From Mytilus californianus (taxonomy: Eukaryota), in assembly GCF_021869535.1 (NCBI RefSeq), contig NW_026262679.1, positions 82,398,001 through 82,462,000 on the forward strand: DNA of 64,000 nucleotides, read 5' to 3'. A program made the translations under genes and the position numbers. The notes beneath the pieces are model-generated. The model searched no databases. It had not been told where the DNA came from and was given only the letters and a program-made list of their open reading frames with translations. Positions 2,437 through 43,992 of the stretch are shown in pieces (the stretch's first letter is position 1; each line of letters begins with the position of its first letter).

Positions 2437-2730
2437 TTCCCAATTTTTGACATTTTTACCTATAATGTCTGTTTGATTTGCTCACACATTGTTGTCAATA
2501 TAACGGAATTCTATGCGACTGTCATACAAGTGAGAGGTTTAGCTAACTATGAAACCAGGTTTAATCCACCATTTTCTACATAAGGAAATGCCTGTATCAA
2601 GTCAGGAATATGACAGTTGTTTTCCATTAGTTTGATGTGTTTGAGCTTTTGGTTTTGCCATTTGATAAGGGACTTTCTGTTTTGAATTTTCCTTGGAGTT
2701 CGGTATTTTTCTTCTTTTTTTTCCATACTA
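2437..2730 (+). mobile_element. Repeat family 3 (probable retroelement 3' region) carrying a twister-like motif
   Basis: Homologous to the reverse complement of 41990-42350. Contains the motif at 2518-2617. Confidence 0.75.
2518..2617 (+). ncRNA. Candidate twister ribozyme, type P5 (family 3 copy)
   Basis: Parse: ACTGTCATA|CAA|GTGA|GAGGT|...GTT|TAA|TCC|AC|CATTTTC-loop-GGAAATG|CCTG|TATCAAGT|CAGG|AA|TATGACAGT. P5 is a perfect 9 bp, P4 is CCTG/CAGG and P3 is 7 bp. P2 is imperfect and P1 is non-canonical. Confidence 0.6.
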
Positions 2731-7604: not shown

Positions 7605-7884
7605 AAAGTATAACAAAAATACAGGATTCCAAGGCAAATCTGAAAAGGGGAAGTCCATTAAACTGACAAAATGAAACACTATCAATCAACGTAAAAAATG
7701 GGGGGGGGTAAAGCTAGCTAAACTCCCCATTTGTATGACAGTTGTTTATAGTTCCGTTAAACTGACAAAACTGGGCGAGCAATCCAAACCTTAGATTGCT
7801 ATAACACATTATTATAGTAATTTCAGCCCAAATAGACATAAAAGGTTGATTGATGTGACAATAATTGGGATCCAGCGGCCAAAA

Positions 7885-9295
7885 ACAGTGTAATAAAATT
7901 GAGAATGGAAATGGGGAATGTGTCAAAGAGACAACAACCCGACCATAGAACAGACAACAGCAGAAGGTCACCAACAGGTCTTCAATGCAGCGAGAAATTC
8001 CCGCACCCGGAGGCGTCCTTTAGCTGGCCCCTAAACAAATATATATACTAGTTCAGTGATAATGAACGCCATACTAAACTCCAAATTGTACACAAGAAAC
8101 TAAAATTAAAAATAATACAAGACTAACAAAGGCTAGAGGCTCCTGACTTGGGACAGGCGCAAAAAAGCGGCGGGGTTAAACATGTTTATGAGATCTCAAC
8201 CCTCCCCCTATACCTATAGCCAATGTAGAAAATATAACGCATAACAATACGCACATTAAAATTCAGTTCAAGAGAAGTCCGAGTCTGATGTCAGAAGATG
8301 TAACCAAAGAAAATAAACAAAATGACAATAATACATAAATAACAACAGACTACTAGCAGTTAACTGACATGCCAGCTCCAGACTTCAATTAAACTGATTG
8401 AAAGATTATGTCTTCATCATATGAATATCAGGCACAATACTTCCCGTTAGGGGTTTAGTATCATACCATCATAACATATATGAGAAGAACATAACCCGTG
8501 TCATGCCAACAACTGGTTTTTAAATAAATGTGTTTAGTGTCGATGCAAAGACCCTATAAGTGAATCAATATTAACGCCAAAATATGCAATCTTTAATGAC
8601 CTGACAACAGTATCGTAACTATATCCCTTCTTAATAAGTCTATTTAAAGGTTTTGTTAGCTTCAGAGGTGAATACTGACATTTTTGTGCTTTATAAAGAA
8701 TATTTCCATAAAAAATTGGATGTGAAATACCTGAACGTATAAGAAGTCTGCATGTTGAGCTATATTTACGAATGATGTCCTTATACCGATGATAAAATTT
8801 AGTAAATGTTTTGCCTAGTTTGTGATATCGAAAACCCTGGTGTAATAATTTTTCAGTAATACATAAATTTCTCTCGTTAAAATCTAAAACATTGTTACAT
8901 ACACGAGCGAATCGTACAAGTTGAGATATATAAACACCGTAAGATGGTGACAAGGGAACGTCACCATCTAAAAATGGATAATTAACGATAGGAAATGAAA
9001 AATCATCTCTTTTATCATATATTTTAGTATTAAGCTTTCCTTTAATGATATAGATATCAAGATCGAGGAAAGGGCAGTGGTCATTGTTAGTATTAGCTTT
9101 ATTTAAAGTAAGTTCAACAGGATAAATTTCTTTAGTATACATACTGAAGTCGTCATTATTGAGAGCCAAAATATCATCCAAATATCTAAAAGTATTATTA
9201 AATTTGTGTATCAGATGTTGTTTCGATGGGTCTTTGCTGATTTTTGTCATAAATTGTAACTCATAGCAATACAAAAAAAGGGTCCGCAATATAAA
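7885..9295 (-). mobile_element. 5'-truncated Penelope-like retroelement, family 1 (RT C-terminal half plus complete 3' region)
   Basis: ORF 9298-8534 has FRYLDDIL (RT catalytic YxDD), KIYDKRDDFSFPIVNYP and YGVYISQLVRFAR. RT is the last domain, with no C-terminal GIY-YIG, which fits Naiad-type organisation (inferred). It is followed by ~650 nt of 3' sequence. Confidence 0.85.
8131..8221 (-). ncRNA. Candidate twister ribozyme, type P5 (family 1 copy, core intact)
   Basis: Minus strand: GGCTATAGGT|ATA|GGGG|GAGGG|TTGAGATCTCATAAACATGTT|TAA|CCCC|GC|CGC-T6-GCG|CCTG|TCCCAAGT|CAGG|A|GCCTCTAGCC. This matches the twister core UAA-P2-GC...UCCCAAG(C/U)...GAGGG. Predicted cleavage is between 8178 and 8177. 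Confidence 0.7.
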
Positions 9296-9789
9296 CATAA
9301 ATCACAGACATACAACAGAACTGACTGATGAAAATTTAAACAAACAATATCTAACAAATACGCAAAAAAAGGTGTTGTGGTAGATAGTAAATATGAAAAA
9401 TCCGCCAACCAAAAGTTTTTGTCGTTGATAGTAAATTGTCAAAGACGCCGATAAAAAAGTTTTTGTCGTTGATAGTCAATACCATATATAGTATACGCTT
9501 CCTCGATAAAGTAAAAATGAAGTAAATTATAAATACAAGGGTACACAAAATAGGAACGACACTGTACAAAACCCTTGTGTGGGAACCGCACCCCATGACC
9601 GACCTGCATCAGGCACGCCCAAGGTAAAACACCCAATGGCGGAATGCATACAAACCGATTCACGTCAACAGTCATACGACCAAAACAAACACTCTCATAC
9701 CACATCTTCCTATATCTAAGACAGCACAAAGACAAATAACGGGAAAAACTAAAGTTAAAAGATACACAACTTAAGCACATAGAATTTAT

Positions 9790-10300
9790 AACACACGACC
9801 ATCTTGTATTATTTGCGAAGTGGTCTAAGTAGCAGCTGTAAGCTCTTGAATATAGTATGAATTGAGAAACGTATATTTCATACGCGGGTGATTTGGTATA
9901 TTACTGCTAAGGTGAGGTAAATTTATAATTTCAAAATTGTAATCGTCTCGTTTGTCATAGATTCTGGAACTGAGATGACCGCTGTTGTCAAATTCGAGGT
10001 AAATGTTTAGAAATGAGGCAGATGAAGCTGTATCTGTGGTTTCTTTAATCTCTAGTTCAGGAGGACATATTAATGGGACCCAATCAGAAAAGTCTGGACT
10101 GTTAATGGAAAGAACATCATCAATATACCTGTATGTCATATTAAATAATCTAGCTTATTTAATCTTCTTGGTTTTACAAGTGTCTGCATGAAGGAACTCC
10201 GACTCATATGAAAATAAGGTCGGCCAGGAGAGGTGCACAGATGGTCGGTATAGGAATGCCGACAACCTACTGGAAAAATCAACCTCCAAATTCAACGAAT
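9790..10300 (-). pseudogene. Frameshifted Penelope-like RT fragment
   Basis: TYRYIDDVLSIN, ELEIKETTDTASSASFL and RIYDKRDDYNFEIIN in ORF 10139-9825, with frameshifts on both sides. Confidence 0.85.
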
Positions 10301-10546
10301 AGGTTGTTAGTGAGAAACTCAAACATACTGATCACTTGTTTTTCTGTGTAGGTTTTTTTCGGGCTCATTTTTAACAAAATGTGCAGAATTATACCCCAAA
10401 ACAGTAGCATATGGTACCATTTTTATGGAGGGAAAGCATTGTAGATTATTTCTTTAAGTAGGGTTTTAATATTCATGTGGTATGGTAGTGTAAAGGGTGG
10501 ACAAATCGAGATTTTAAATTTTCCAAAATTTCTTTTGAATTCTTAA

Positions 10547-10810
10547 GAATCGCGCGTCTGGCGTACAAAATTATAAGCCTTGTTATCTTTGTTAAGTTTT
10601 TTACAACCACTGGTGGTGGAGGTTTCCTGCCTTAGGGTATCACCATCCCAGTAATCAGCACTTCTGTGTTGATATGACATATAATTGATATGGTCATATT
10701 TATAGATTCGCTGTCTACAAAACTTTGATTTGTTCGAAATACTAAGTATTTCTACCCAAGGAAACGCACGTCTGACGAACAACATTATAAGCCTTGTATT
10801 TTTGATGAGT
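10547..10810 (+). mobile_element. Retrozyme fragment flanked by direct repeats of the hammerhead 3' half
   Basis: GAATCGCGCGTCTGGCGTACAAAATTATAAGCC at 10547 and GAAACGCACGTCTGACGAACAACATTATAAGCC at 10761. Confidence 0.7.
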
Positions 10811-12049
10811 TTTTTAACACAGTTTGACATACATTTTTTTTAAATGCATAGTTGTGGTTTCGAAATAACTTCTAATCAGTATGATTACCGACTTAAAAAA
10901 CTACTGATTTTGTTAAAAGAGTTTCTTTTCTATTGTCGTTGCATACGTTTTCCAAATATATTGGTTTTGTTATATGAAGGCTTTGGTAAATTATGAATAC
11001 GGCATGACATCATTTCTCAAATAAGTGATTTGTTTTCATATTCTTAGAGGTGGTGACACGATGGTGCTTATTTCCCAAATCGCTCTTTTTTATATTTTCC
11101 ATCAACTTTTAACTTTTTTTCCTTCTTTACCTCAGATCTCACTTTTTTACCCATTCTATCCCACATCCCAAAAGCGTATCATCATCATCTTCTTACATTT
11201 AAAAAGGCGTAAATAAAGGCTGAAAATTACTTTTTTTACATATCTTTTCCGATTTTGTGTCATCATGACCAAGTTTACTTTGTGAATTTGAATACCGCTC
11301 TAACAGATAGTTTAAAATATCGAAATTGATATTTCAAAACACACAGAAGAACAATGGCCAATACACATAAGTAATATAATATATAGATCTACTCCTTAGA
11401 TTATACATTTTTCTATTTCTTTTGTATATGATCAACTGCTGTCATGATTTTCTATTGTAAGTAATAGATTGCTATTTAACATACATTTTAGAAGGTTTTA
11501 GTTAAACAATAGTTAAGAAATAGTTTATGTGATTTGCGGTATTAAATTAACAAGTGAATGTCTTGACTGTTATTAGTTAATTTGAAAAACTCTTTTGACT
11601 ATAGAGTTAAAGTAAATGCTAATTTTATATACACTTATATAACATTTGACAGTCCAGTTATTCATGACTAGGACTAATACCTGAAGTTATCTATTGCACC
11701 CAGTTCACGATTTTGTTTTTTTCTGCATATACAAAATTCACAAGGATAAACTATCCTCTATTTTAACATTGATATTTGCATAAAAAATACCCGCTTCTTA
11801 ATAGTAACAATGAGATTTTTAAAAAGAATGAATTAGGGAACTGGGAACTGTGACTTCATATGGTTAAAATGACAAAACTGATGGTATAAGTATTCTATAT
11901 AGTCCCTACTGCAGCTTAATGAATGAGATATATACATTCAAGTCTATCTAAATGCCACTTTCAAGCTCCCAATTGGGGCACTATCCTTCAACATAGAAGT
12001 TAAATCTTTTAAATACTTCCCTACTTTAAAGACCAATCTGTTCAAATCA

Positions 12050-12900
12050 TCACTTATACATATATCACACGTATTTCGACTTAAATGTTCAACTACAAAT
12101 ATATGTTGCAGGATCTCGATATTGATGACTTCAGGTCGCAACCTTCGGATTACACATATGCAAGCTCCCCATTCATATATAATATGGCAAACAACGTTAT
12201 AAATGTTGACCTCTACGAAAAGATAGTACGAAATATATCTTTAAAGACCCAAATGTTGCCAGGTTCCTATCCTACTTCCATTACACATATATTGTGGAAC
12301 CCGCAGACAAAGCCCAAAATAATGTAATTTACAGTACTAGTACATAAACAGCTTGATAAGGGATAAGGGTATCGATGATTCTCTGTAAAACCCTACATTT
12401 ACTCCAACGACACTTACTAAAGATGAACCCATGAACAACCGTAGATCTGTTTTATGTTCTTTTGCAATTTTAACTAATGATTAAGATCTGGATTTCCTTC
12501 ACTCTACAAATTACATACATGTTCTTACACACAACTCTATATTACTGGGTCTTCCAAATGCTCGAAGAAACCTCTTTCCAAATGCGTGAAAAAACCATTT
12601 TCCAAATTGTTTTAAAACATTTGTTTTATCTGCAGTCGAACCCGGGCACTAGAGTTACTCTGAAACTCCTTCTTTATGGGCGATGTGAATCAGATGAAGA
12701 TACTATTAAATCCGAAGATCTGTCAGATAAAATACAATCTAATTTGATCTCCTCGTGCAGTAGTAAACAAACAGTATCTACTCTTTACACCAGTATTCGT
12801 CATTCTAAACTTAAAGACAGATTCAAAGAGAAAGTCCATCTTCGTTTCATACAAAACCCAACGAAAATAACAAGCATCTTGTTTTAGGAAAGAACAAATC
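12050..12900 (+). pseudogene. Degenerate N-terminal part of a Penelope-like ORF
   Basis: Similar to 3300-4020 (ASSPFIY, FKDPNVA, YLINSLI-type segments). Many stops and frameshifts. Confidence 0.6.
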
Positions 12901-12904
12901 ATAC

Positions 12905-13345
12905 CCTGGCACGTCCGGTCTGTGTTTTTGTTTGATGTTTTTCAGCTTTGTATCGATCTGATGAGTTAAGCCTTTTTAGACTGATTTTTATAGTTTGTTC
13001 TTATGTTGTGCTGTTACACCACTGTCCCAGGTTAGGGGAGGGTTGAGCGCTCACAAATATCTTTTACCCCTCAACATTTTTATGAGCCTGTCCCAAGTCA
13101 GAAGCCTGTAGTTCAGTGTTTGGTTCATGTCTGTCATATTTGTTTTTCGTAAATTGTTTTGTTTTGAATTAGGTCGTTATTTTTTCTCAATTGAATTGTT
13201 TCATATTTTCATGTTTGTGCCTTTTATTGCCGACTTATTGTTGAAGGCCGTACGAATACCTATAATTGCTTACATCCACTTTATTTGAACCTTGGTGGAT
13301 AGTTGTCTCATTGGCAATCATATATCATCTCCTTATCTCTATTTT
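12905..13345 (+). mobile_element. 3' region of Penelope-like family 2 with a degenerate twister-like motif (13019-13118)
   Basis: CCACTGTCCCAGGTTAGGGGAGGGTTGAGCGCTCA...CCTGTCCCAAGTCAGAAGCCTGTAGTTCAGTG. TAA is changed to TTA and GC to TC, and P4 has a mismatch. Ends in GTTGTCTCATTGGCAATCAT. Confidence 0.8.
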
Positions 13346-13464
13346 GTAAAGAAACACTCTGATAAAAACAAAGAGTTCTCTGAAATCAAAATCATCAAGA
13401 TGTATGATTTTTCATTTTCATTTCTTTTTTCTTTTTTTAAATTTGGAGGACGTGTTTTTGAGCA

Positions 13465-24500: not shown

Positions 24501-26847
24501 CTTTCAATAGTTTGGTGTTATACGAGTGTTCATCGCACGCGTAAAGATGGATAACATTCAACTCTTAAACGAAATACACAGTAATTGGCACAACTGATGA
24601 GGAATTTAGAAAAAAATAATCCCGTTCTGTTGATAAGGGTATTTTAGGGTACGCTTTTTTCTACATAATGGCTTCATCACTTTGATATTAGATAAAATGA
24701 GCTTTTTATTTAAGAAAACCTAGAGGTATTGAAAATTATTGGAACTTTTATTAATAAATGTTTTCAACGAACACGATCAAAATAGATATGCTTATATGCA
24801 ACCCATTAAGAATATTTGCCTGTTAATATTTATATTATCTGTTTTATTAATGCTTTTTTATACATATACTTATACTCTGGTCTGGCTGAGGCTTAAATGC
24901 ACAAAATAAGGTGATTATATCCATATTCATAAAATTATGTGTTTCTCTCAATTGTAAAAAAAAAATCATTGTTATAAACTACTTAGCTCAACCTGGGCCC
25001 TTTAATTGGAATAAAAATATCTTTATCTTAATCATTTGTACTTGGTCAGAATGTTCTCGGACTCGCTGTAGGCAAAACATGGTCACATAGTTATGACAAA
25101 ATCTTCGGGTGTGAGGTAGAGGTTAATTCAATTGTACTGATACATGTATTAGTATAGATAGATACAAGATAAATAATTCACTCAGGGAATTAGCATAACA
25201 GCAACAATACGATTACAGTTCATGAACGTCTTTAAAAGTATGAAAGGAGAATCGTCTCAGGAAGGAAATATGTTATAGTTATTATATTTACATGATATTT
25301 AAGTCTTATTTTTTAAGGAATAGATTTTAGACTTTGTAAATATTTTCGGTATGCCAGTGTTGAAACAGGGAATATACATTGTAAAAACGTTAACATTTGT
25401 TACTATAGAAAATTTATATTCAATATATTTTCTATTATAATCTTTCTTTTTTAAGAGAGGTTAATTCTAAGGGATGGGCGCTAGATCTAAATAAATAATT
25501 TATTCTAGTAACTTACAATTTCCAGATTAATTTTTGAAGGAGCAAAAACATGTTCATACAGTGTAAAATTGAACAAATTATCATATTGCGAACTCAGATA
25601 TATATATAGTACCACCATATATGCCTCTAGCTGGCAAACTGTAATAATACATGCTTTTGAATTTCAAACTATGAAATTGAACTCAGACTTAATCTGCGAT
25701 GACATTGCGTAAATTAATGTTTAAGAAATCTAATTCGTTTACAATTTGCTTTGATCCACAGAATGACATTTAAGAAGAAAGTAATGATTTTTTATTAAAT
25801 CGATAGTACCTGTATTACATCTGGGACGTTCGTTCTATGATACATTGAGGTTTCAATTAAAAATTGCGTACTTTCTTGTGAACCATATCAACATTAATCA
25901 ATTCAACACAAATGCAGTAAGGATATACTCTGGACGTAAGAAACAATTTATTTTTATAATTTGTTATCTGAATTAAAATTTTGAGACATTTCAGACTTTA
26001 AAATAGATATGGTAGTTTTAGTCCCAAAATAATCTTTAAGTGACATGTAGCTTATTTCATATAAGTACCCCAGCTACTTTTTTGAGAAAACAAGCAGAAG
26101 GATTACACATTGATTCATATATGACGAATCTAACTCGAATATTTCGATTTTAACCATGCTATGCATTATCCCTAAAAGTTCAGTCATACGGTGTTAATCA
26201 TCTACGTAGGTGAATAGACCTAGTTTTTACATGGTGATAAACCACATACAGATAAAATGACATCTTTTATACATGAGTTGATGACGAACAGGTTTTGAAT
26301 TGTATCCTTGGCCATATAGTGTCGGTGTAAATAAGTATATGTATGGAATACATGTACCAATGCCGTCTCCTAATCCATAGGACAGTTGATGGAAATTTAT
26401 GACACCCCTCTTTTCATTTTCGATTTTGATGGTCTTTCGTATAGTCCAAATCTTTTTTTTTCGTGTTTACGTTCGAATTCGTACCATTGATTGGTATGTT
26501 TTTGTTTCCTCGATTCTGTTCTTTTTTATGCCCCCTTTTTAACTTGGTTTGTTCGGAATCTTCTACCATGTGACTTATTTATTGCTTTCTACAAGTCAAT
26601 GAACTTAAATCAATAACAAAGAAGTTGTTCGGGAGTTTTTATAAAATCAACGACATAAAGTAAAGCTTAAAGATGTAATCATTTAATCTTGACTTCGTGT
26701 AAGATAGCAATGCATGTAAAAAATTCACTAGAAAAAAATGTCTTCTGCATGCTATATTGTAGTCGAGTCAAAGTGCTACTAAATTGACAAATGTCTTTTA
26801 ATGTTAATCTGTTAATTTTCAACAGAATACATTTTAAAGCCAACTAT

Positions 26848-27135
26848 GCCACGTTCTTTATGTGCCTGTCCCAAGTCAGGAGCCTGGTTGTCGTTGGTTG
26901 TCATATTTGTTATTCGTTAACTGTTTTGTTATAAATAAGGCCGTTTATTTTCTCAATTGAATTGCCAGTTTCATATTTTTCATGTCGGGACCTTTTAGAG
27001 CCGATTATTCGGTATGGGTTTTTCTCATTGTTGAAGGCCGTACGGTTGCCTATAATTCCTTACATCCACTTCAATTGAACTTTGGTGGATAGTTGTCTCA
27101 TTGGCAATCATACCACATCTCCTAATTTTTATATG
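26848..27135 (+). mobile_element. Family 2 3' terminal fragment beginning inside the twister motif
   Basis: GCCACGTTCTTTATGTG-CCTG-TCCCAAGT-CAGG-AGCCTG, then ...TTGAAGGCCGTACGG...GTTGTCTCATTGGCAATCATACCACATCTCC. Confidence 0.8.
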
Positions 27136-35100: not shown

Positions 35101-38079
35101 TTGCAGACTACTGGTAACTGTGAAGTAATATTTTATCACGATGGTTCAAATCAGCAATAGAATATTTCTATCAACGAATAAGACAAAGAATTACCAAAGC
35201 GGTCTTATATCATTCAGTATTATTTTATAACATAATTACAGAAAATGATTCAGGCTGTGTAAATGGTTCATTCGAGAGTGATGAAGAAGTGGTGAAGAGA
35301 AATCTCCCAGTAATGGCAGAATACCAGGGAACTCGAACATACAGAAGTGCTGTAAGTATTTTTTTTTCAATGTACACCATTTTATCATTGTGGTAATTTG
35401 TAGGTAGTTTACTTTTTCAGCTACTTGCAACACAATAATGTGGTATGATGGTCCAATGAGACAATTTTACACCAGAGACCAAATGATGTACAAGTTAACA
35501 ACTATAGGTCACCGCACGGCCTTCGACAATGAACAAAACCCATACTCCATAGCAAGCTATATAAAAGCTCTGTCATGACAAATGTAAAACAATTCAAACA
35601 AGAAAACTAGCAGTCTGATTTATGTAAATGAACGGAAAACAAATATGATATACAGTAACAAACGACAACCACTGAATTACAGGATCCTGACTTGGGACAG
35701 ACATGCACATACAGAATGTTGCGGGGTTAAACATGTTAGCGGGTGCCCAATCAGACCCCTAATCTGGAACAGTGGTATAACAGCACAACATTAGAATGTT
35801 TATATTACTATCATATGTCGATGCAACCGCTGGTTGTCTATCAGTTCCCATGTCTTCCTCTTACCTAGTAATGAGTGCGTTGGTACTGCCTTGATTTAAC
35901 GGATACATTCAAAAAGAAATTATGCCCGTGTCCAAAAACTGAGATTGCAGACAGTACGTTTTAGGCGGATTTTTTGATATTCTGTTTAGGCCTTTTTGGT
36001 TCTTGTGTTCCAAACGTTTTTACTTCTTTTGAGTTCACAAACTATAGGTCTCGAGCGTATCGAGCTTTTCTTACAGAAACACTTGTCACTAGTCATGCGC
36101 GCTTAAATCAGAATTGTATGTCTGTATACCATATTACCAGCTGTCACTATGGCAAACACAATAGGAATAGTGTTCCCGATTGCCATTCAAAACAATTGTT
36201 ATTTTTTTCTTCGTGTACAGCAGGTTTATGTATACTGTTCCGATTCACGGTAGTTGCAATACATTGGATTTTGCAATCGTGCAGATTTTGATCGTTGTGA
36301 ACTATTTCATCTGCAGTACCAATAGTCAGTTAGAGGGTGTGGTTTATATTAAATTACAATTCATAATTTAGATTAACGAATAGAAAATAAATCCTTCGGA
36401 ACAATTACCAATACAGTCTTTCAAAGCCCTCCTAAAATTTAATGACTAACATCCCCACAAAAGAAATAATGCAATTGACATGATTTTGATCTCTTGTTAG
36501 GAAGGAGATCCATATTTTATTTTTGCAATTTAGTAGTTTTAATGCAAGAGTAAATTGTAATCAATTAAAAGATTTTGCTAATAAATAAAAAAACTTATAT
36601 TCACAAGGAACGACATATAAGGAGATTGGGCTCTAGTAGAGTAACCCCTTAGCAACGACAATCCACATAATAGATTTGAAAATATTTTTAAAGATCACAG
36701 GTCATTTTAATGAGACCTCATACCGCAAGGTTGCCAGTTACTTAACTTTGGATTCATAAATATTCGTCGGATGCCAATTTTTATGGATTTAGTAAGATGC
36801 AAAGATTTAGTTTTGAAGTTCGGCTGTACCTTTAGAAAACTTATTTCAAAGGGAATAGCACATCCTAATTTTTACGATCATGTTGTTAACCGAGCCCGGA
36901 AATTTAGATACGATCCGGGTAGGCTTATTAATCCTTTAAATAAACTTCTTCTAAAAGGTTAGCAGTTCTACACTGCAATTAGATCTTTGAATATTGTTTT
37001 TTATTGATAAAAATGTTGATTTTGTTATCAGTAAAACCATACTAAATATTATTGTTATGCACAAATGCACATTCACGGTTCTACAATCTGTCCTTGCCTA
37101 TATTTTGGCATTGCACAAGGTCATATTTTTCTCTGACTGTAAGTGACGTCTTTACACAAATATACCATATAATCCATTGGATATTGGATGTGTACTGATT
37201 GATATTTTAGTCTCAGATACATGATTGGCTTTGAACTAGCTGTCAGTAACTTCGAGTACTCTCATTTTTTGTTGTTAGGGATGTAAAAATACCCTGCTAC
37301 GTCCGGTTTGTTAGATGTGTTTCTGCTTTGTATCGATCTAATGAGTTAAGCCCTTTTCAACTGATTTGTATAGCCGACTATACGCATTCTTTATATGCCT
37401 GTCCCAAGTCAGGAGTCTGTAGTTCTGTGGTTGTCGTTGTTTCATGTCTGTCATATTTGTTTTTCGTAAATTATTTTTTATAAATTAGGCCGTTAGTTTC
37501 TCAATTGAATTTTTTCATATTTTTCATGTCGGGGCCTTTTATAGCCGACTATACGGTATGGGTTTTTCTCATTGTTAAAGGCCGTACGGTAGCCTATAAT
37601 TGCTTACATCCACTTTATTTAAACTTTGGTGGATAGTTGTCTCATTGGCAATCATACCTCATCTCCTTATTTTTATATACGGTATGCGTTTTTCTCATTG
37701 TTGTTGCCTATCATATCTTACATCGACTTCATTTGAACTTTGAGTGGATAGTTGTGGTACTCACTCCACATCTCCTTATTTTAAATTGGGTTTCTGTCCA
37801 CTAAACTCCATGAAATACAAGTTTAGTGACATTGATTGGAGCAAATGATAAAACCACGAAATAAAATAAACAGCATGTATGGGGTTATGTATTTGTCTAA
37901 TCTCGAAAATTGATACCAACGAGAATAAATGAAACTACAATATATAGCTAGTGCAAATGAAACCATAATATGTAGTGCAAGTAAAGATAATGAATTGTAT
38001 ATGTGAATGCTTTCAAATTTTTGTTATTTTAACACACATTTTTTTATTGTAGGAGGGTGTTCCATTGACAGACCTGTAG
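29196..38079 (+). CDS. Voltage-sensor-domain-only protein, divergent Hv1 (voltage-gated proton channel) family member, ~482 aa if the tentative 5' exons are right
   Basis: Phase-consistent GT-AG exons 29196-29320, 31083-31261, 31688-31741, 32455-32605, 32963-33078, 33815-33905, 34434-34943, 35242-35351 and 38053-38079 (stop). S1 IIALTVVDIFFITVELMI; S2 HYISLVIALIFFIELLLRL; S3 QLIDGFTVFNLAAIEVL; S4 IVALRLLRIPKAC; then a coiled coil, a Ser-rich tail and C-terminal RTYRSAEGVPLTDL*. Tentative in-phase 5' exons are 20107-20137 and 27737-27791. Confidence 0.85.
32255..32410 (+). mobile_element. Family 2 3' terminal fragment (intronic)
   Basis: GTCGGGGCCTTTTGTAGCTGACTATACGGTATGGG...CGTACGGTGACCTATAA...GTTGTCTCATTGGCAATC. 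Confidence 0.8.
35435..35790 (-). mobile_element. Family 2-like 3' region with a degenerate twister motif (35669-35775)
   Basis: Minus strand CCACTG..AGGGG-TCTGA (GAGGG lost)..AACATGTTTAACCCCGC..CTGTCCCAAGTCAGGATCCTGTAATTCAGTGG. Confidence 0.8.
36690..37680 (+). mobile_element. Penelope-like element family 2: RT C-terminal remnant plus 3' region
   Basis: KDLVLKFGCTFRKLISKGIAHPNFY..PLNKLLLKG aligns with KDIIRKYSSTCRLLIRSGISHPIFY..PLNRLIKKG of the family 1 ORF. The 3' region has an internally deleted twister motif (3' half at 37398-37430) and the shared tail. Confidence 0.8.
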
Positions 38080-41989: not shown

Positions 41990-42350
41990 GAAAAAGTAAA
42001 ATCACAAAAATACTGAACTCCGAGGAAAATTCAAAATGGAAAGTCCCTAATCAAATGGCAAAATCAAAAGCTCAAACACATCAAACGAATGGATAACAAC
42101 TGTCATATTCCTTACTTGGTACAGGCATTTTCTTATGTAGAAAATGGTGGATTGAACCTGGTTTTATAGCTAGCTGAACCTCTCACTTGTATGACAGTCG
42201 CATCAAATTCCATTATATTGACAACGATGCGTGAACAAAACAAACAGACACAATAGGTAAAAAATGCCAAAAACAGGGGTACAGCAGTCAACATTGTGTT
42301 ATCATCTTAATCACTATAAAAACAAACAAATGTAACAAAGAAGCACAAAA
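41990..42350 (-). mobile_element. Repeat family 3 copy inserted in Gypsy gag; twister-like motif at 42099-42198
   Basis: Minus strand ACTGTCATA|CAA|GTGA|GAGGT|..GTT|CAA|TCC|AC|CATTTTCT-AGAAAATG|CCTG|TACCAAGT|AAGG|AA|TATGACAGT. Confidence 0.8.
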
Positions 42351-43049: not shown

Positions 43050-43992
43050 TTGACAGTTATGTTTGGAGGACGTGTTTTTCAACAAACAATGGGAACAAAC
43101 TGTGCCCCTCTTCTTGCCGACTTGTTCCTTAATTCATATGAAGCTGACGTCATCCAGGAGCTTCTTAGGAAGAAAGAAAAGAAGTTAGCAGGTATCTTTT
43201 AAATTCACTTTCCGCTATATAGATGATGATCTCTCACTAAACAATTCAACATTTGGTGACTATGTTGAACGCAGCATCTATCCCATCCTTGAGATAAAGG
43301 ATACAACAGATACAGTTAAGTCTGCCTCATATCATGACTTACATCTAGAAATTGACAACGAGGGTCGGTTGAAAACAAAACTTTACGACAAAAGAGATGA
43401 TTTCAGCTTCCCAATTGTGAAATTTCTATGTAGCAACATCCAAGCAGCGTCTGTATACGGAGTATATATCTCCCAATTGAAACGATATTCTAGGGCATGC
43501 ATTTCATATCATGATTTCCTTGATAGAGGGTTGCTGCTCACAAGGAAGCTATTAGACCAAGAGTTCCAATTGGTGAAGTTGAAATCATTCCTTCGTTAAT
43601 TTTACGGACGCCATCACGAGTTCGTTGACCGTTATTGAATATCCGTTTCACAGATGACAACGGATATGTTCCAATTGTTGTAACTACAATCCCGCCCCCT
43701 TTTCCCCGAAAGTGACCTACCGAATTAGACTCATCACCAGGTTTGTACTAACATGAGCAACACGACGGGTGCCACCCGAGGAGCAGGATCTGCTTACCCA
43801 TCCGGAGCACCTAAAGATCACCCCCAGTTTTGGTGGGGTTCGTGTTGCTCAGTCTTTAGTTTTCTATGTTGTGTTTTGTGTACTGTTGTTTGTCTGTTGG
43901 TATTTTTTTTTTCTTTTTTAGCCATGGCAATGTCAGTTTATTTTCGACTTATAAGTTTAAATGTTCCTTTGGTATCTTTCGCCTCTCTTTTA
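43050..43992 (+). mobile_element. 5'-truncated Penelope-like element family 4 (frameshifted RT plus 3' UTR)
   Basis: MGTNCAPLLADLFL, FRYIDD, KTKLYDKRDDFSFPIV, YGVYISQLKRYSRAC and FYGRHHE, followed by the most frequent repeat in the window. Confidence 0.9.

What the first reader, a model, noticed from the sequence alone, without database searches (positions are those of the whole stretch)
8131..8221. Type-P5 twister-ribozyme-like fold in the 3' region of a Penelope-like retroelement
Seen: about 310 nt downstream of the RT stop codon, on the same strand, lies P5a-ATA-GGGG-GAGGG...TAA-CCCC-GC-[P3 CGC/GCG]-CCTG-TCCCAAGT-CAGG-A-P5b. Established: the twister core (e.g. the rice example) reads UAA-P2-GC..P4-UCCCAAGC-P4'-A..P2'-GAGGG. 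Pseudoknot T1 pairs L4 CCC with GGG, T2 pairs GC with L4 G(C/U), the G of GAGGG is the general base and cleavage is at U/A. All of these positions are present here, in the circularly permuted P5 order. Established: the ribozymes typically described in Penelope-like elements are hammerheads. Inference: this PLE lineage uses a twister instead, to process tandem or read-through transcripts at 8178/8177. I do not know whether this has been reported for bivalves.
Basis: partly seen in the sequence, partly recalled or inferred. Interest (0 to 1): 0.88.

Follow-up and report, generated by a model that had tools for sequence, protein, structure and literature searches.

The report
Twister ribozyme fold in Naiad retroelement tail
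The flagged 91 bases have the complete, evolutionarily maintained fold of a circularly permuted twister self-cutting RNA. They are a built-in part of the 3' tail of Naiad (Penelope-like) jumping genes, a group published as lacking a ribozyme, but actual cutting has not been shown.

Summary
All type-P5 twister parts are present: UAA cleavage site (U8178/A8177), P2, GC, P3, P4, the L4 loop, the conserved A, a 10-bp P5 and GAGGG.

Rfam's Twister-P5 model makes the same parse but scores only 22.8 bits (cut-off 37.6), mainly because there is no canonical P1.

The decisive evidence is comparative. The module sits about 370-390 nt after the RT stop in at least three divergent Naiad lineages, and about 220 nt before the element's 3' end where I measured it (family A, window copies of B and C). 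Their RTs are 40-75% identical. P2, P3, P5 and two of the three pairs of pseudoknot T1 change by compensatory substitutions.

The host element is a selenoprotein-coding Naiad with four in-frame UGA codons and a SECIS. P1 is replaced by two short palindromes that can only pair between molecules, which suggests dimer-dependent action like the hammerheads of Penelope-like elements.

Cutting is unproven. RNA-seq shows no pile-up of ends at the predicted site.

No paper in the held library links twisters to Penelope-like or Naiad elements. Twisters are known at the 5' ends of RTE/Perere-3 elements. This scan has flagged the same motif many times elsewhere in this genome.

The parts
8131..8221 (-). 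Complete twister-like module (type P5, with P3, without canonical P1).
   Evidence: Sequence. Rfam Twister-P5 alignment over 8142-8208. Own covariance model R1 scores 71.8 bits at 8124-8228.
8212..8221 (-). P5 5' strand (GGCTATAGGT). It pairs with 8131-8140, giving 9 of 10 pairs in this copy. About half of the sampled genomic copies, and over 90% of RNA reads, carry G at 8216, which makes all 10 pairs.
   Evidence: 8216 A>C on the + strand in 93-99% of reads.
8200..8208 (-). P2 3' strand GGGG (8208-8205), putative general-base G (8204), A (8203), and GGG of pseudoknot T1 (8202-8200).
   Evidence: P2 and T1 covary in families D and E.
8189..8198 (-). Palindrome 1 (TGAGATCTCA), one base after GAGGG, where the P1 3' strand would lie.
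   Evidence: A perfect or near-perfect palindrome of different sequence stands at the same place in the families examined; it is imperfect in one C subtype and in some decayed copies. Pair counts are AU 49 / GC 40 at the middle pair. The monomer linker is unstructured, while the homodimer folds at -15.6 kcal/mol.
8178..8187 (-). Palindrome 2 (AAACATGTTT), ending at U-1 of the predicted cleavage site.
   Evidence: Family D has AAACGTTT and family E has AAACC-A-GGTTT at the same place.
8176..8178 (-). UAA, with the predicted scissile bond between U8178 and A8177.
   Evidence: Position in the Rfam alignment. Inferred from the twister consensus (PMC5408937). Not shown experimentally.
8170..8175 (-). 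P2 5' strand CCCC and the L2 dinucleotide GC (T2 partner).
8158..8169 (-). P3 hairpin (CGC / GCG here, CGCA / TGCG in most copies).
   Evidence: It covaries with CACAT/ATGTG (B, C), TGCAT/ATGCA (D) and ATTTTC/GAAAAT (E).
8142..8157 (-). P4 (CCTG/CAGG) closing loop L4 (TCCCAAGT). CCC pairs with GGG 8202-8200 (T1). GT pairs with GC 8171-8170 (T2, one G-U wobble).
8131..8141 (-). Conserved A (8141) and the P5 3' strand (8140-8131).
8418..8482 (-). SECIS element of the same 3' UTR.
   Evidence: Rfam SECIS_1 scores 39.1 bits, above its gathering score of 35. An intact copy has four in-frame TGA codons and ends in TAA.
8534..9291 (-). C-terminal part of the Naiad reverse-transcriptase reading frame. 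This copy is 5'-truncated.
   Evidence: the copy matches L031 5128-6525. RT motifs are shown.
7892..8130 (-). 3' tail of the element, from the twister to the common 3' end of the family.
   Evidence: Nearly all of the 30 sampled copies end at the same base; the exceptions are tandem units that run on and a few interrupted copies. Reads run into unlike flanks at 7891-7894.

Best explanation
The motif is a genuine member of the twister RNA fold. It is circularly permuted (open at P5), has a P3 hairpin and has no canonical P1. It is an integral, selected part of the 3' UTR of Naiad Penelope-like retroelements. It lies after the SECIS and about 220 nt before the element's 3' end. The most likely function is self-cleavage between U8178 and A8177, with G8204 as general base and A8177 as general acid. 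This would cut read-through or tandem-array transcripts at a fixed point in the terminal repeat, the role usually proposed for the hammerheads that other Penelope-like elements carry at the equivalent place. In place of P1 there are two palindromes that cannot fold within one molecule but pair strongly between two. Cleavage may therefore need two copies to pair, as described for the minimal hammerheads of Penelope-like elements. Shown: sequence match, fold, covariation, position and host element. Inferred: catalysis, cleavage site, dimer requirement and biological role.
For: (1) All conserved twister positions are present, and Rfam Twister-P5 gives the same parse over its full length.
(2) The module recurs in at least five repeat families of this genome: 120 matches to model R1 in 349 kb of held sequence, 7 of them in the window.
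(3) For families A, B and C, a Naiad RT reading frame 40-75% identical to that of family A ends about 370-390 nt upstream of the module. The module has therefore been kept while the proteins diverged.
(4) Covariation: family D has the P2 pair C-G changed to A-U, the T1 pair C-G changed to U-A (loop TCCTAAGT with GAAGG), and P3 TGCAT/ATGCA. Family E has the T1 pair C-G changed to A-U (loop TACCAAGT with GAGGT) and an unrelated 9-bp P5.
(5) Formal count on 102 distinct sequences: 90.8% of cells paired against 84.6% when shuffled. There are 205 cells with a change on both sides, against 50.6 when shuffled (0 of 500 shuffles reach this) and at most 55 when partners are slid. T1 pairs show UA in 7 and AU in 3 sequences. 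T1, T2 and the palindromes were not part of the model that made the alignment.
(6) The D change is not compensated in the rival hairpin GGGTT/AACCC of the minimum-free-energy fold, but it is compensated in L4.
(7) The two young families have intact cores. In A, 16 of 17 distinct sequences are intact. D is judged from copy L064, to which other genomic copies are 97-99% identical; of the two D sequences counted, one is intact.
(8) Published assays say the deviations seen here are tolerated. P1 is dispensable, and G-U wobbles in the 2-bp pseudoknot and imperfections in P2 have little effect (PMC11662667; PMC5408937).
(9) Naiads were reported to lack canonical hammerheads (PMC8557442).
Against: No cleavage has been shown. 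In four RNA-seq runs the depth falls smoothly across the site. In X21 it is 1071 at 8134, 962 at 8166, 846 at 8216 and 705 at 8233. No place near 8177/8178 passes the tool's threshold for molecule ends, which is a fifth of local depth. The reads lie about equally on both strands and run into unlike flanks, so most come from passive transcription of thousands of copies and may say little about the element's own RNA.

The Rfam score is below the gathering cut-off, and there is no canonical P1.

Older families multiplied with imperfect cores. Most B copies have a 4-G run, which means either a 3-bp P2 or no free catalytic G, plus a C.A mismatch in P4. Family E fits best with no unpaired G before AGGT and only one T2 pair.

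A half-module family (window 37365-37433 and 26785-26900) keeps only P3-P4-P5b.

A cut at this site would separate the reading frame from the 3' tail at which reverse transcription must start.
Confidence: 0.6

Rival explanations
1. It is a twister-derived structured RNA that no longer cuts, or rarely cuts, in vivo. On this reading it is kept because the compact double-pseudoknot fold, and perhaps the palindromes, serve another step of retrotransposition. Candidates are recognition of the 3' UTR by the element's RT, RNA dimerisation or packaging into the RNP, or protection of the tail.
For: RNA-seq shows no cleavage signature. Families B and E reached at least 1,400-2,500 first-look candidates with non-canonical cores. 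A half-module family retains the P3-P4-L4-P5b part almost unchanged. A cut would detach the tail needed for target-primed reverse transcription (inference). The palindromes favour intermolecular pairing.
Against: The catalytic nucleotides, which have no obvious purely structural role (A8177, A8176, G8204), are intact in the young families A and D. Published data predict activity for exactly these deviations. Canonical Penelope-like elements carry an active ribozyme at the equivalent place (PMC6765202).
Confidence: 0.27
2. It is an active twister that is a selfish passenger. The ribozyme module hitch-hikes in Naiad tails without serving the element, as Craig et al. suggested might hold for hammerheads in Penelope-like elements.
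For: That suggestion appears in PMC8557442. The module is shared between lineages whose flanking UTR sequence is otherwise dissimilar.
Against: The position relative to the RT stop codon is the same in three lineages, and relative to the 3' end wherever it was measured. The module also diverges roughly in step with the RT. Both fit vertical descent within the element rather than repeated capture. I made no test that separates passenger from component.
Confidence: 0.1
3. It is a chance resemblance in a repeat, with no twister fold.
For: The Rfam score is below threshold and there was no hit in the larger searches. The single-sequence fold z-score is only -1.8.
Against: There are compensatory changes in P2, P3 and P5 and in two pairs of pseudoknot T1 across families, against shuffled and slid controls. 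The 10-bp P5 is not part of the Rfam model.
Confidence: 0.03

Closest known systems
Type-P5 twister ribozymes (Rfam RF02684, clan CL00120; Roth et al. 2014 as reviewed in PMC5408937)
   Same: Same order of elements and same conserved nucleotides: UAA, a 4-bp P2, GC, P3, P4, the loop GUCCCAAG(Y)C, A, P5 and GAGGG. Both pseudoknots can form, and T1 covaries.
   Different: There is no base-paired P1. Two palindromes fill the 22-nt linker instead. T2 has a G-U wobble. The junction nucleotides of the model between GC and P4 are replaced by P3. The score of 22.8 bits is below the gathering score of 37.6.
[quoted passage not shown] 2017; summarised in PMC6765202 and PMC7761336)
   Same: A small self-cleaving-ribozyme motif in the terminal repeat or 3' region of a Penelope-like element that inserts in tandem. 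The helix next to the cleavage site is replaced by a sequence that pairs between two molecules.
   Different: It belongs to a different ribozyme class. The host is the Naiad clade, for which no canonical hammerhead was found (PMC8557442). Dimer dependence here is only inferred from the palindromes.
Twister variants at the 5' end of Perere-3 / RTE non-LTR retrotransposons (Liu et al. 2021, PMC8501958; remark in PMC7761336)
   Same: A twister-class ribozyme as a built-in part of a retrotransposon, with an incomplete or unconventional P1.
   Different: Those lie at the 5' end, are type P1 with P1 completed by the target-site duplication, and release the element RNA from upstream transcript. Here the motif is type P5 and internal to the 3' UTR, about 220 nt from the 3' end. 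A cut would therefore split the ribozyme and the element RNA.
Selenoprotein-coding Naiads of clams (Naiad_Scon, Naiad_Mmer; Craig et al. 2021, PMC8557442)
   Same: N-terminal GIY-YIG domain, CxC and DKA motifs, an in-frame UGA eight residues after DKA, UGA codons around the GIY-YIG motif, and a SECIS just after the stop codon.
   Different: That paper mentions no twister (0 occurrences). I could not compare with its consensus sequences because the supplement is not held.

Membership tests
Twister ribozyme (type P5) | L1 5' strand N/A-A with the scissile bond 5' of a conserved A | tested here: met
   U8178/A8177-A8176. AA is present in 17 of 17 A, 28 of 28 C and 24 of 26 B distinct sequences.
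Twister ribozyme (type P5) | L1 3' strand G-A-G-G-G (general-base G, A, T1 triplet) | tested here: met
   8204-8200. Family D has GAAGG with a compensating loop change. Many B and C copies have one G fewer.
Twister ribozyme (type P5) | P2 of 4 base pairs | tested here: met
   GGGG/CCCC, with a compensatory A-U in family D. Three of the 4 pairs show changes on both sides. The alignment was fitted to this helix.
Twister ribozyme (type P5) | P4 closing loop G-U-C-C-C-A-A-G-Y-C | tested here: met
   8157-8142. The loop positions U..AAG are kept in nearly all copies.
Twister ribozyme (type P5) | Pseudoknot T1 (loop CCC with GGG) | tested here: met
   81.8-91.9% of cells are paired. Compensatory UA occurs in 7 and AU in 3 distinct sequences, at two different pairs. 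These columns were not in the model used for alignment.
Twister ribozyme (type P5) | Pseudoknot T2 (L2 GC with loop GC) | tested here: met
   G-U plus C-G, with 96% of cells paired. Ten sequences have G changed to A, giving A-U. Only one-sided changes were seen, so there is no compensatory proof. The wobble is reported as tolerated.
Twister ribozyme (type P5) | P1 stem next to the cleavage site | tested here: not met
   The bases after GAGGG and the bases before U-1 cannot pair in any family. Two palindromes stand there instead. P1 is reported as dispensable for catalysis.
Twister ribozyme (type P5) | Rfam gathering score | tested here: not met
   22.8 bits against 37.6. No hit in the 64-kb or 251-nt searches.
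Twister ribozyme (type P5) | Site-specific self-cleavage | tested here: inconclusive
   RNA-seq shows no ends at the site above a fifth of local depth. This cannot exclude partial, regulated or dimer-dependent cleavage. An in vitro assay is not possible with these tools.
Naiad clade of Penelope-like elements | GIY-YIG endonuclease N-terminal to the RT, with CxC linker and DKA motif | tested here: met
   One reading frame in L031 carries GIY-YIG-like motifs, then SCNCS, then ADKA, then RT motifs. This is by motif only. Pfam and PDB searches found nothing.
Naiad clade of Penelope-like elements | Copies 5'-truncated with a common 3' end, and tandem arrays forming pseudo-LTRs | tested here: met
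   (4018-4020 bp spacing; 3' ends at one base).
Naiad clade of Penelope-like elements | Selenoprotein subtype: in-frame UGA at conserved Cys positions plus a SECIS after the stop | tested here: met
   Four TGA codons and a final TAA. One TGA lies eight codons after DKA, as published. SECIS_1 scores 39.1 bits.
Naiad clade of Penelope-like elements | Placement in an RT phylogeny with named Naiads | not tested
   No named reference sequences were available. 4,485 unnamed homologues were found.

The most novel reading that the evidence does not exclude
Naiad twisters are obligate-dimer ribozymes. The helix that normally closes the active site (P1) is supplied only when the palindromes of two copies pair, either in two element RNAs or in two units of a tandem transcript. 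Cleavage would then be switched on by multimeric or concentrated element RNA and would yield unit-length, possibly circularisable, templates. This would be an independent re-invention, with a different ribozyme class, of the dimeric hammerhead strategy of other Penelope-like elements.
Probability: 0.25. Interest if true: 0.85.

Novelty: new variant of a known kind. Interest (0 to 1): 0.68.

Why it matters
Penelope-like elements are the one retroelement class defined partly by a ribozyme, the hammerhead. The Naiad/Chlamys branch, the most abundant in many invertebrates, was the puzzling exception.

If Naiads carry a twister at the equivalent place, three things follow:
- A self-cleaving RNA would be a general requirement of this class rather than a passenger.
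- Two unrelated ribozyme folds would have been recruited for the same step.
- The role of that step would become testable in a system with young, very abundant families.

It would also add on the order of 100,000 twister-like motifs in one bivalve genome. That figure is a rough extrapolation from 7 matches in 64 kb. The motif would also be a natural P1-less, possibly dimer-dependent, twister architecture that current covariance models miss.

Tried and rejected
- **Rfam:** neither the gathering threshold on the window nor E<=10 on 251 nt gave a twister. Only a 101-nt search passed the filters.
- **Genome-wide Rfam search with RF02684:** only 79 of 35,978 candidates were scored, so it is uninformative.
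- **Canonical P1:** I looked in every family and found none.
- **Minimum-free-energy fold:** it prefers a GGGTT/AACCC helix over P2+T1. I rejected this as the conserved structure because family D's change is compensated in L4, not in that helix.
- **Family B as a short non-autonomous element:** I first read it that way from its uniform 5' limit. I withdrew this because the limit is that of the truncated window copy, and other B and C copies have a Naiad RT upstream.
- **Protein searches of the reading frames:** Pfam and PDB sequence searches gave no hits. The homologue search gave thousands of unnamed proteins.
- **Supplements:** those of Craig 2021 and McKinley 2024 are not held. I could not check published Naiad consensus sequences or the published bivalve twister candidates.
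- **More D and E copies:** D and E rest on 3-6 copies each, and their link to an RT is untested.
- **RNA-seq:** no cleavage signature, and no junction at 8177 among the listed best-supported loose ends, where the weakest row shown has 87 reads at a depth of a few hundred to about 1,000.

Full report
**1. The observation.**
On the minus strand of the window, 8221-8131 reads as follows:
- P5a GGCTATAGGT, then ATA, then GGGG, then GAGGG.
- A 22-nt linker.
- T/AA, then CCCC, then GC.
- CGC-TTTTTT-GCG, then CCTG, then TCCCAAGT, then CAGG.
- A, then P5b GCCTCTAGCC.

The predicted scissile bond is U8178/A8177. The motif begins 313 nt after the stop of the reading frame 8534-9298.

Rfam found no twister at the gathering threshold or at E<=10 in 251 nt. 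The model skips P1 and treats P3 as an insertion. P5 is not part of the model. By my arithmetic such a score is expected by chance about ten times in 1.65 Gb. It is a consistent parse, not proof.

A single-sequence fold recovers P5, P3 and P4. For the centre it prefers a GGGTT/AACCC hairpin (z = -1.8).

**2. The host element.**
The stretch is highly repeated. The best 40 genomic matches are 97-100% identical, out of 940 first-look candidates, and three lie 4,020 bp apart in tandem.

Nearly all of the 30 sampled copies end at the same base and start at different points. That is the pattern of 5'-truncated retroelement copies. The window copy spans 7892-9291 and is a 1.4-kb 3' fragment.

In an intact tandem unit (L031) a single frame of about 990 codons carries, in order:
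- GIY-YIG-like motifs.
- A CxC motif (SCNCS).
- ADKA.
- Reverse-transcriptase motifs (FDFSTLY, PMGTNCAP, YLDD).

The frame is interrupted only by four TGA codons and ends in TAA. One TGA lies eight codons after DKA. Rfam finds a SECIS at window 8418-8482, just after the stop.

These are the published marks of selenoprotein-coding Naiads of clams (Craig et al. 2021, PMC8557442). That paper states that Naiads lack canonical hammerheads and never mentions twister.

The assignment is by motif only. Pfam and PDB sequence searches see nothing, and the 4,485 homologues are unnamed.

The twister lies about 330 nt after the stop and about 220 nt before the 3' end.

**3. Relatives of the motif.**
A loose scan of the window and of the flanks of fetched loci turned up many diverged versions. 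With two more genome searches, nhmmer found 119 instances in 349 kb of held sequence, and a covariance model found 120. Seven of these are in the window.

They fall into families:
- **A:** the finding.
- **B:** the type at window 13016-13122.
- **C:** the type at window 35666-35778.
- **D:** L064 271-377 and others.
- **E:** window 2513-2622 and 42094-42203, and others.
- **Half-modules:** copies lacking the 5' half (window 37365-37433 and 26785-26900).

tblastn with the family A RT shows that B and C modules are preceded by Naiad RT frames only 40-75% identical to A. These frames end about 370-390 nt upstream of the module. The module is therefore ancestral to several Naiad lineages and has kept its place.

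D is a young family: other copies are 97-99% identical to L064. E is older, at 89-94%. I could not fetch more copies of D and E.

**4. Covariation.**
By direct reading:
- **P5 inner stem:** GAGGT/GCCTC in A, CAGGT/GCCTG in B, C and D, and an unrelated 9-bp helix in E.
- **P3:** CGCA/TGCG in A, CACAT/ATGTG in B and C, TGCAT/ATGCA in D, ATTTTC/GAAAAT in E.
- **P2:** CCCC/GGGG, but ACCC/GGGT in D.
- **Pseudoknot T1:** loop CCC with GGG in A-C, loop CCT with AGG in D, loop ACC with GGT in E.

The D change is not compensated in the rival hairpin.

For a formal count I built a model from B, C and D-type sequences using the nested helices only. I aligned all 120 matches to it, then added T1, T2 and the palindromes as extra brackets. 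Results on 102 distinct sequences:
- 90.8% of cells are paired, against 84.6% when shuffled.
- 205 cells have changes on both sides, against 50.6 when shuffled (0 of 500 shuffles reach this) and at most 55 for slid partners.
- T1 pairs show UA in 7 sequences and AU in 3.
- T2 shows G-U in 83 and A-U in 10.

Two caveats apply. Cells count sequences rather than events, and the nested helices were fitted by the model. The pseudoknots and palindromes were not fitted.

**5. What is unusual.**
No family has a P1. The bases after GAGGG cannot pair with the bases before U-1. In its place are two palindromes.
- **Palindrome 1** starts one base after GAGGG. It is perfect or near-perfect, and its sequence differs between families: TGAGATCTCA, TGAGCGCTCA, GGGATCCC, TGGCGCCA, GGCGCC, GCTAGC.
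- **Palindrome 2** ends at U-1: AAACATGTTT, AAACGTTT, or AAACC-A-GGTTT.

Folded alone, the linker is unstructured (0 to -1.5 kcal/mol). As a homodimer it gives -9 to -19 kcal/mol. By analogy with the minimal hammerheads of Penelope-like elements that cleave as dimers (PMC6765202 and PMC7761336), I infer that a P1-like helix may form only between two copies. This is inference.

**6. Would it cut?**
Published work says:
- P1 can be deleted without loss of activity (PMC5408937).
- In about 2,600 natural twisters, imperfections in P1, P2 and P4 and wobbles in the pseudoknots are tolerated.
- Changes of A1 and A2 are severe, and changes of the general-base G are partly deleterious (PMC11662667).

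Family A deviates only in tolerated ways, and 16 of 17 distinct A sequences keep every core feature.

Against this stand the older families. Most B copies and about half of C copies have one G fewer in the run before AGGG. E fits best with no unpaired G and one T2 pair. These families nevertheless multiplied.

**7. RNA evidence.**
I laid four RNA-seq runs of the same species label on window 7850-13400. Family A sequence is abundant in RNA, with a mean depth of about 500-1,200 per strand direction over 7850-8221. Three things argue that most reads come from passive transcription of many copies:
- Reads lie about equally in both directions.
- Depth rises towards the 3' end, as copy number does.
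- 62% of what was laid runs on into unlike sequence.

No place near 8177/8178 passes the threshold for molecule ends. Depth declines smoothly across it: 1071, 962, 846 and 705 at 8134, 8166, 8216 and 8233 in X21.

Bulk cleavage is therefore excluded in these data. Partial, regulated or dimer-dependent cleavage of the element's own transcript is not excluded.

The reads also show that most expressed copies carry G at 8216 (perfect P5) and A at 8166 (a fourth P3 pair).

**8. Known or new.**
- Twisters were predicted in bivalves (PMC11662667), but without details that I could read.
- Twister variants are established at the 5' ends of Perere-3/RTE elements (PMC8501958; PMC7761336).
- Hammerheads are the ribozyme of Penelope-like elements.
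- No paper in the held library contains both 'Naiad' and 'twister'. None of those containing 'Penelope-like' and 'twister' whose passages I read links the two.

I therefore class this as a new variant of a known kind.

The scan's own notes list the same motif many times on other pieces of this genome, with the same reading. I reached mine before opening them, and they are not independent evidence.

**9. Verdict.**
- The fold is real and selected: about 0.9.
- It is a self-cleaving ribozyme serving the element: about 0.6.
- It works as a dimer: about 0.25.

Noticed in passing
window 8418-8482 (-), with L031 6940-9903 (+): A SECIS element lies just after the stop codon. There are four in-frame TGA codons (L031 7057, 7150, 7183, 8458) in an otherwise open frame of about 990 codons ending in TAA. 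This is a selenoprotein-coding Naiad, as published for two clams.
   Followed up: yes
window 13016-13122 (+), 35666-35778 (-), 2513-2622 (+), 42094-42203 (-): Four more full-length twister-like modules of other families (B, C, E, E) lie in the same 64 kb. The B and C copies have decayed cores. The E type has a T1 pair changed to A-U and seems to lack the unpaired catalytic G.
   Followed up: partly
window 37365-37433 (+) and 26785-26900 (+): These are half-modules. P3, P4/L4 and P5b are well conserved, but the 5' half (P5a, P2', GAGGG, palindromes, UAA) is replaced by unrelated sequence. At 36795-37004 an RT C-terminus 41% identical to family A lies upstream. Why the 3' half alone is kept is unexplained.
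   Followed up: partly
window 12940-12975 (+) and 37322-37350 (+): The string CTGATGAG (or CTAATGAG), the first half of a hammerhead core, lies about 60 nt upstream of the family B twister, with no GAAA half nearby. Craig et al. list such 'HHR_half_core' cases in Naiad 3' UTRs.
   Followed up: no
window 43056-43635 (+) and 9841-10338 (-): Further diverged RT fragments lie here, 43% and 32-51% identical to the family A RT. They are probably other Penelope-like lineages. The second lies directly upstream of the truncated family A copy and is not part of it.
   Followed up: no
(runs X1-X20): Runs labelled with four different organism codes hold 66-95% of the sampled 31-letter words of the family A 3' UTR. 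Near-identical copies therefore occur under several species labels. This could be close relatives, mislabelling or recent transfer.
   Followed up: no
L065, L077 and other family C copies, P3 loop: A 4-nt duplication (ATGT) lengthens the P3 loop or stem in the GGGATCCC subtype of family C without disturbing the pairing.
   Followed up: no
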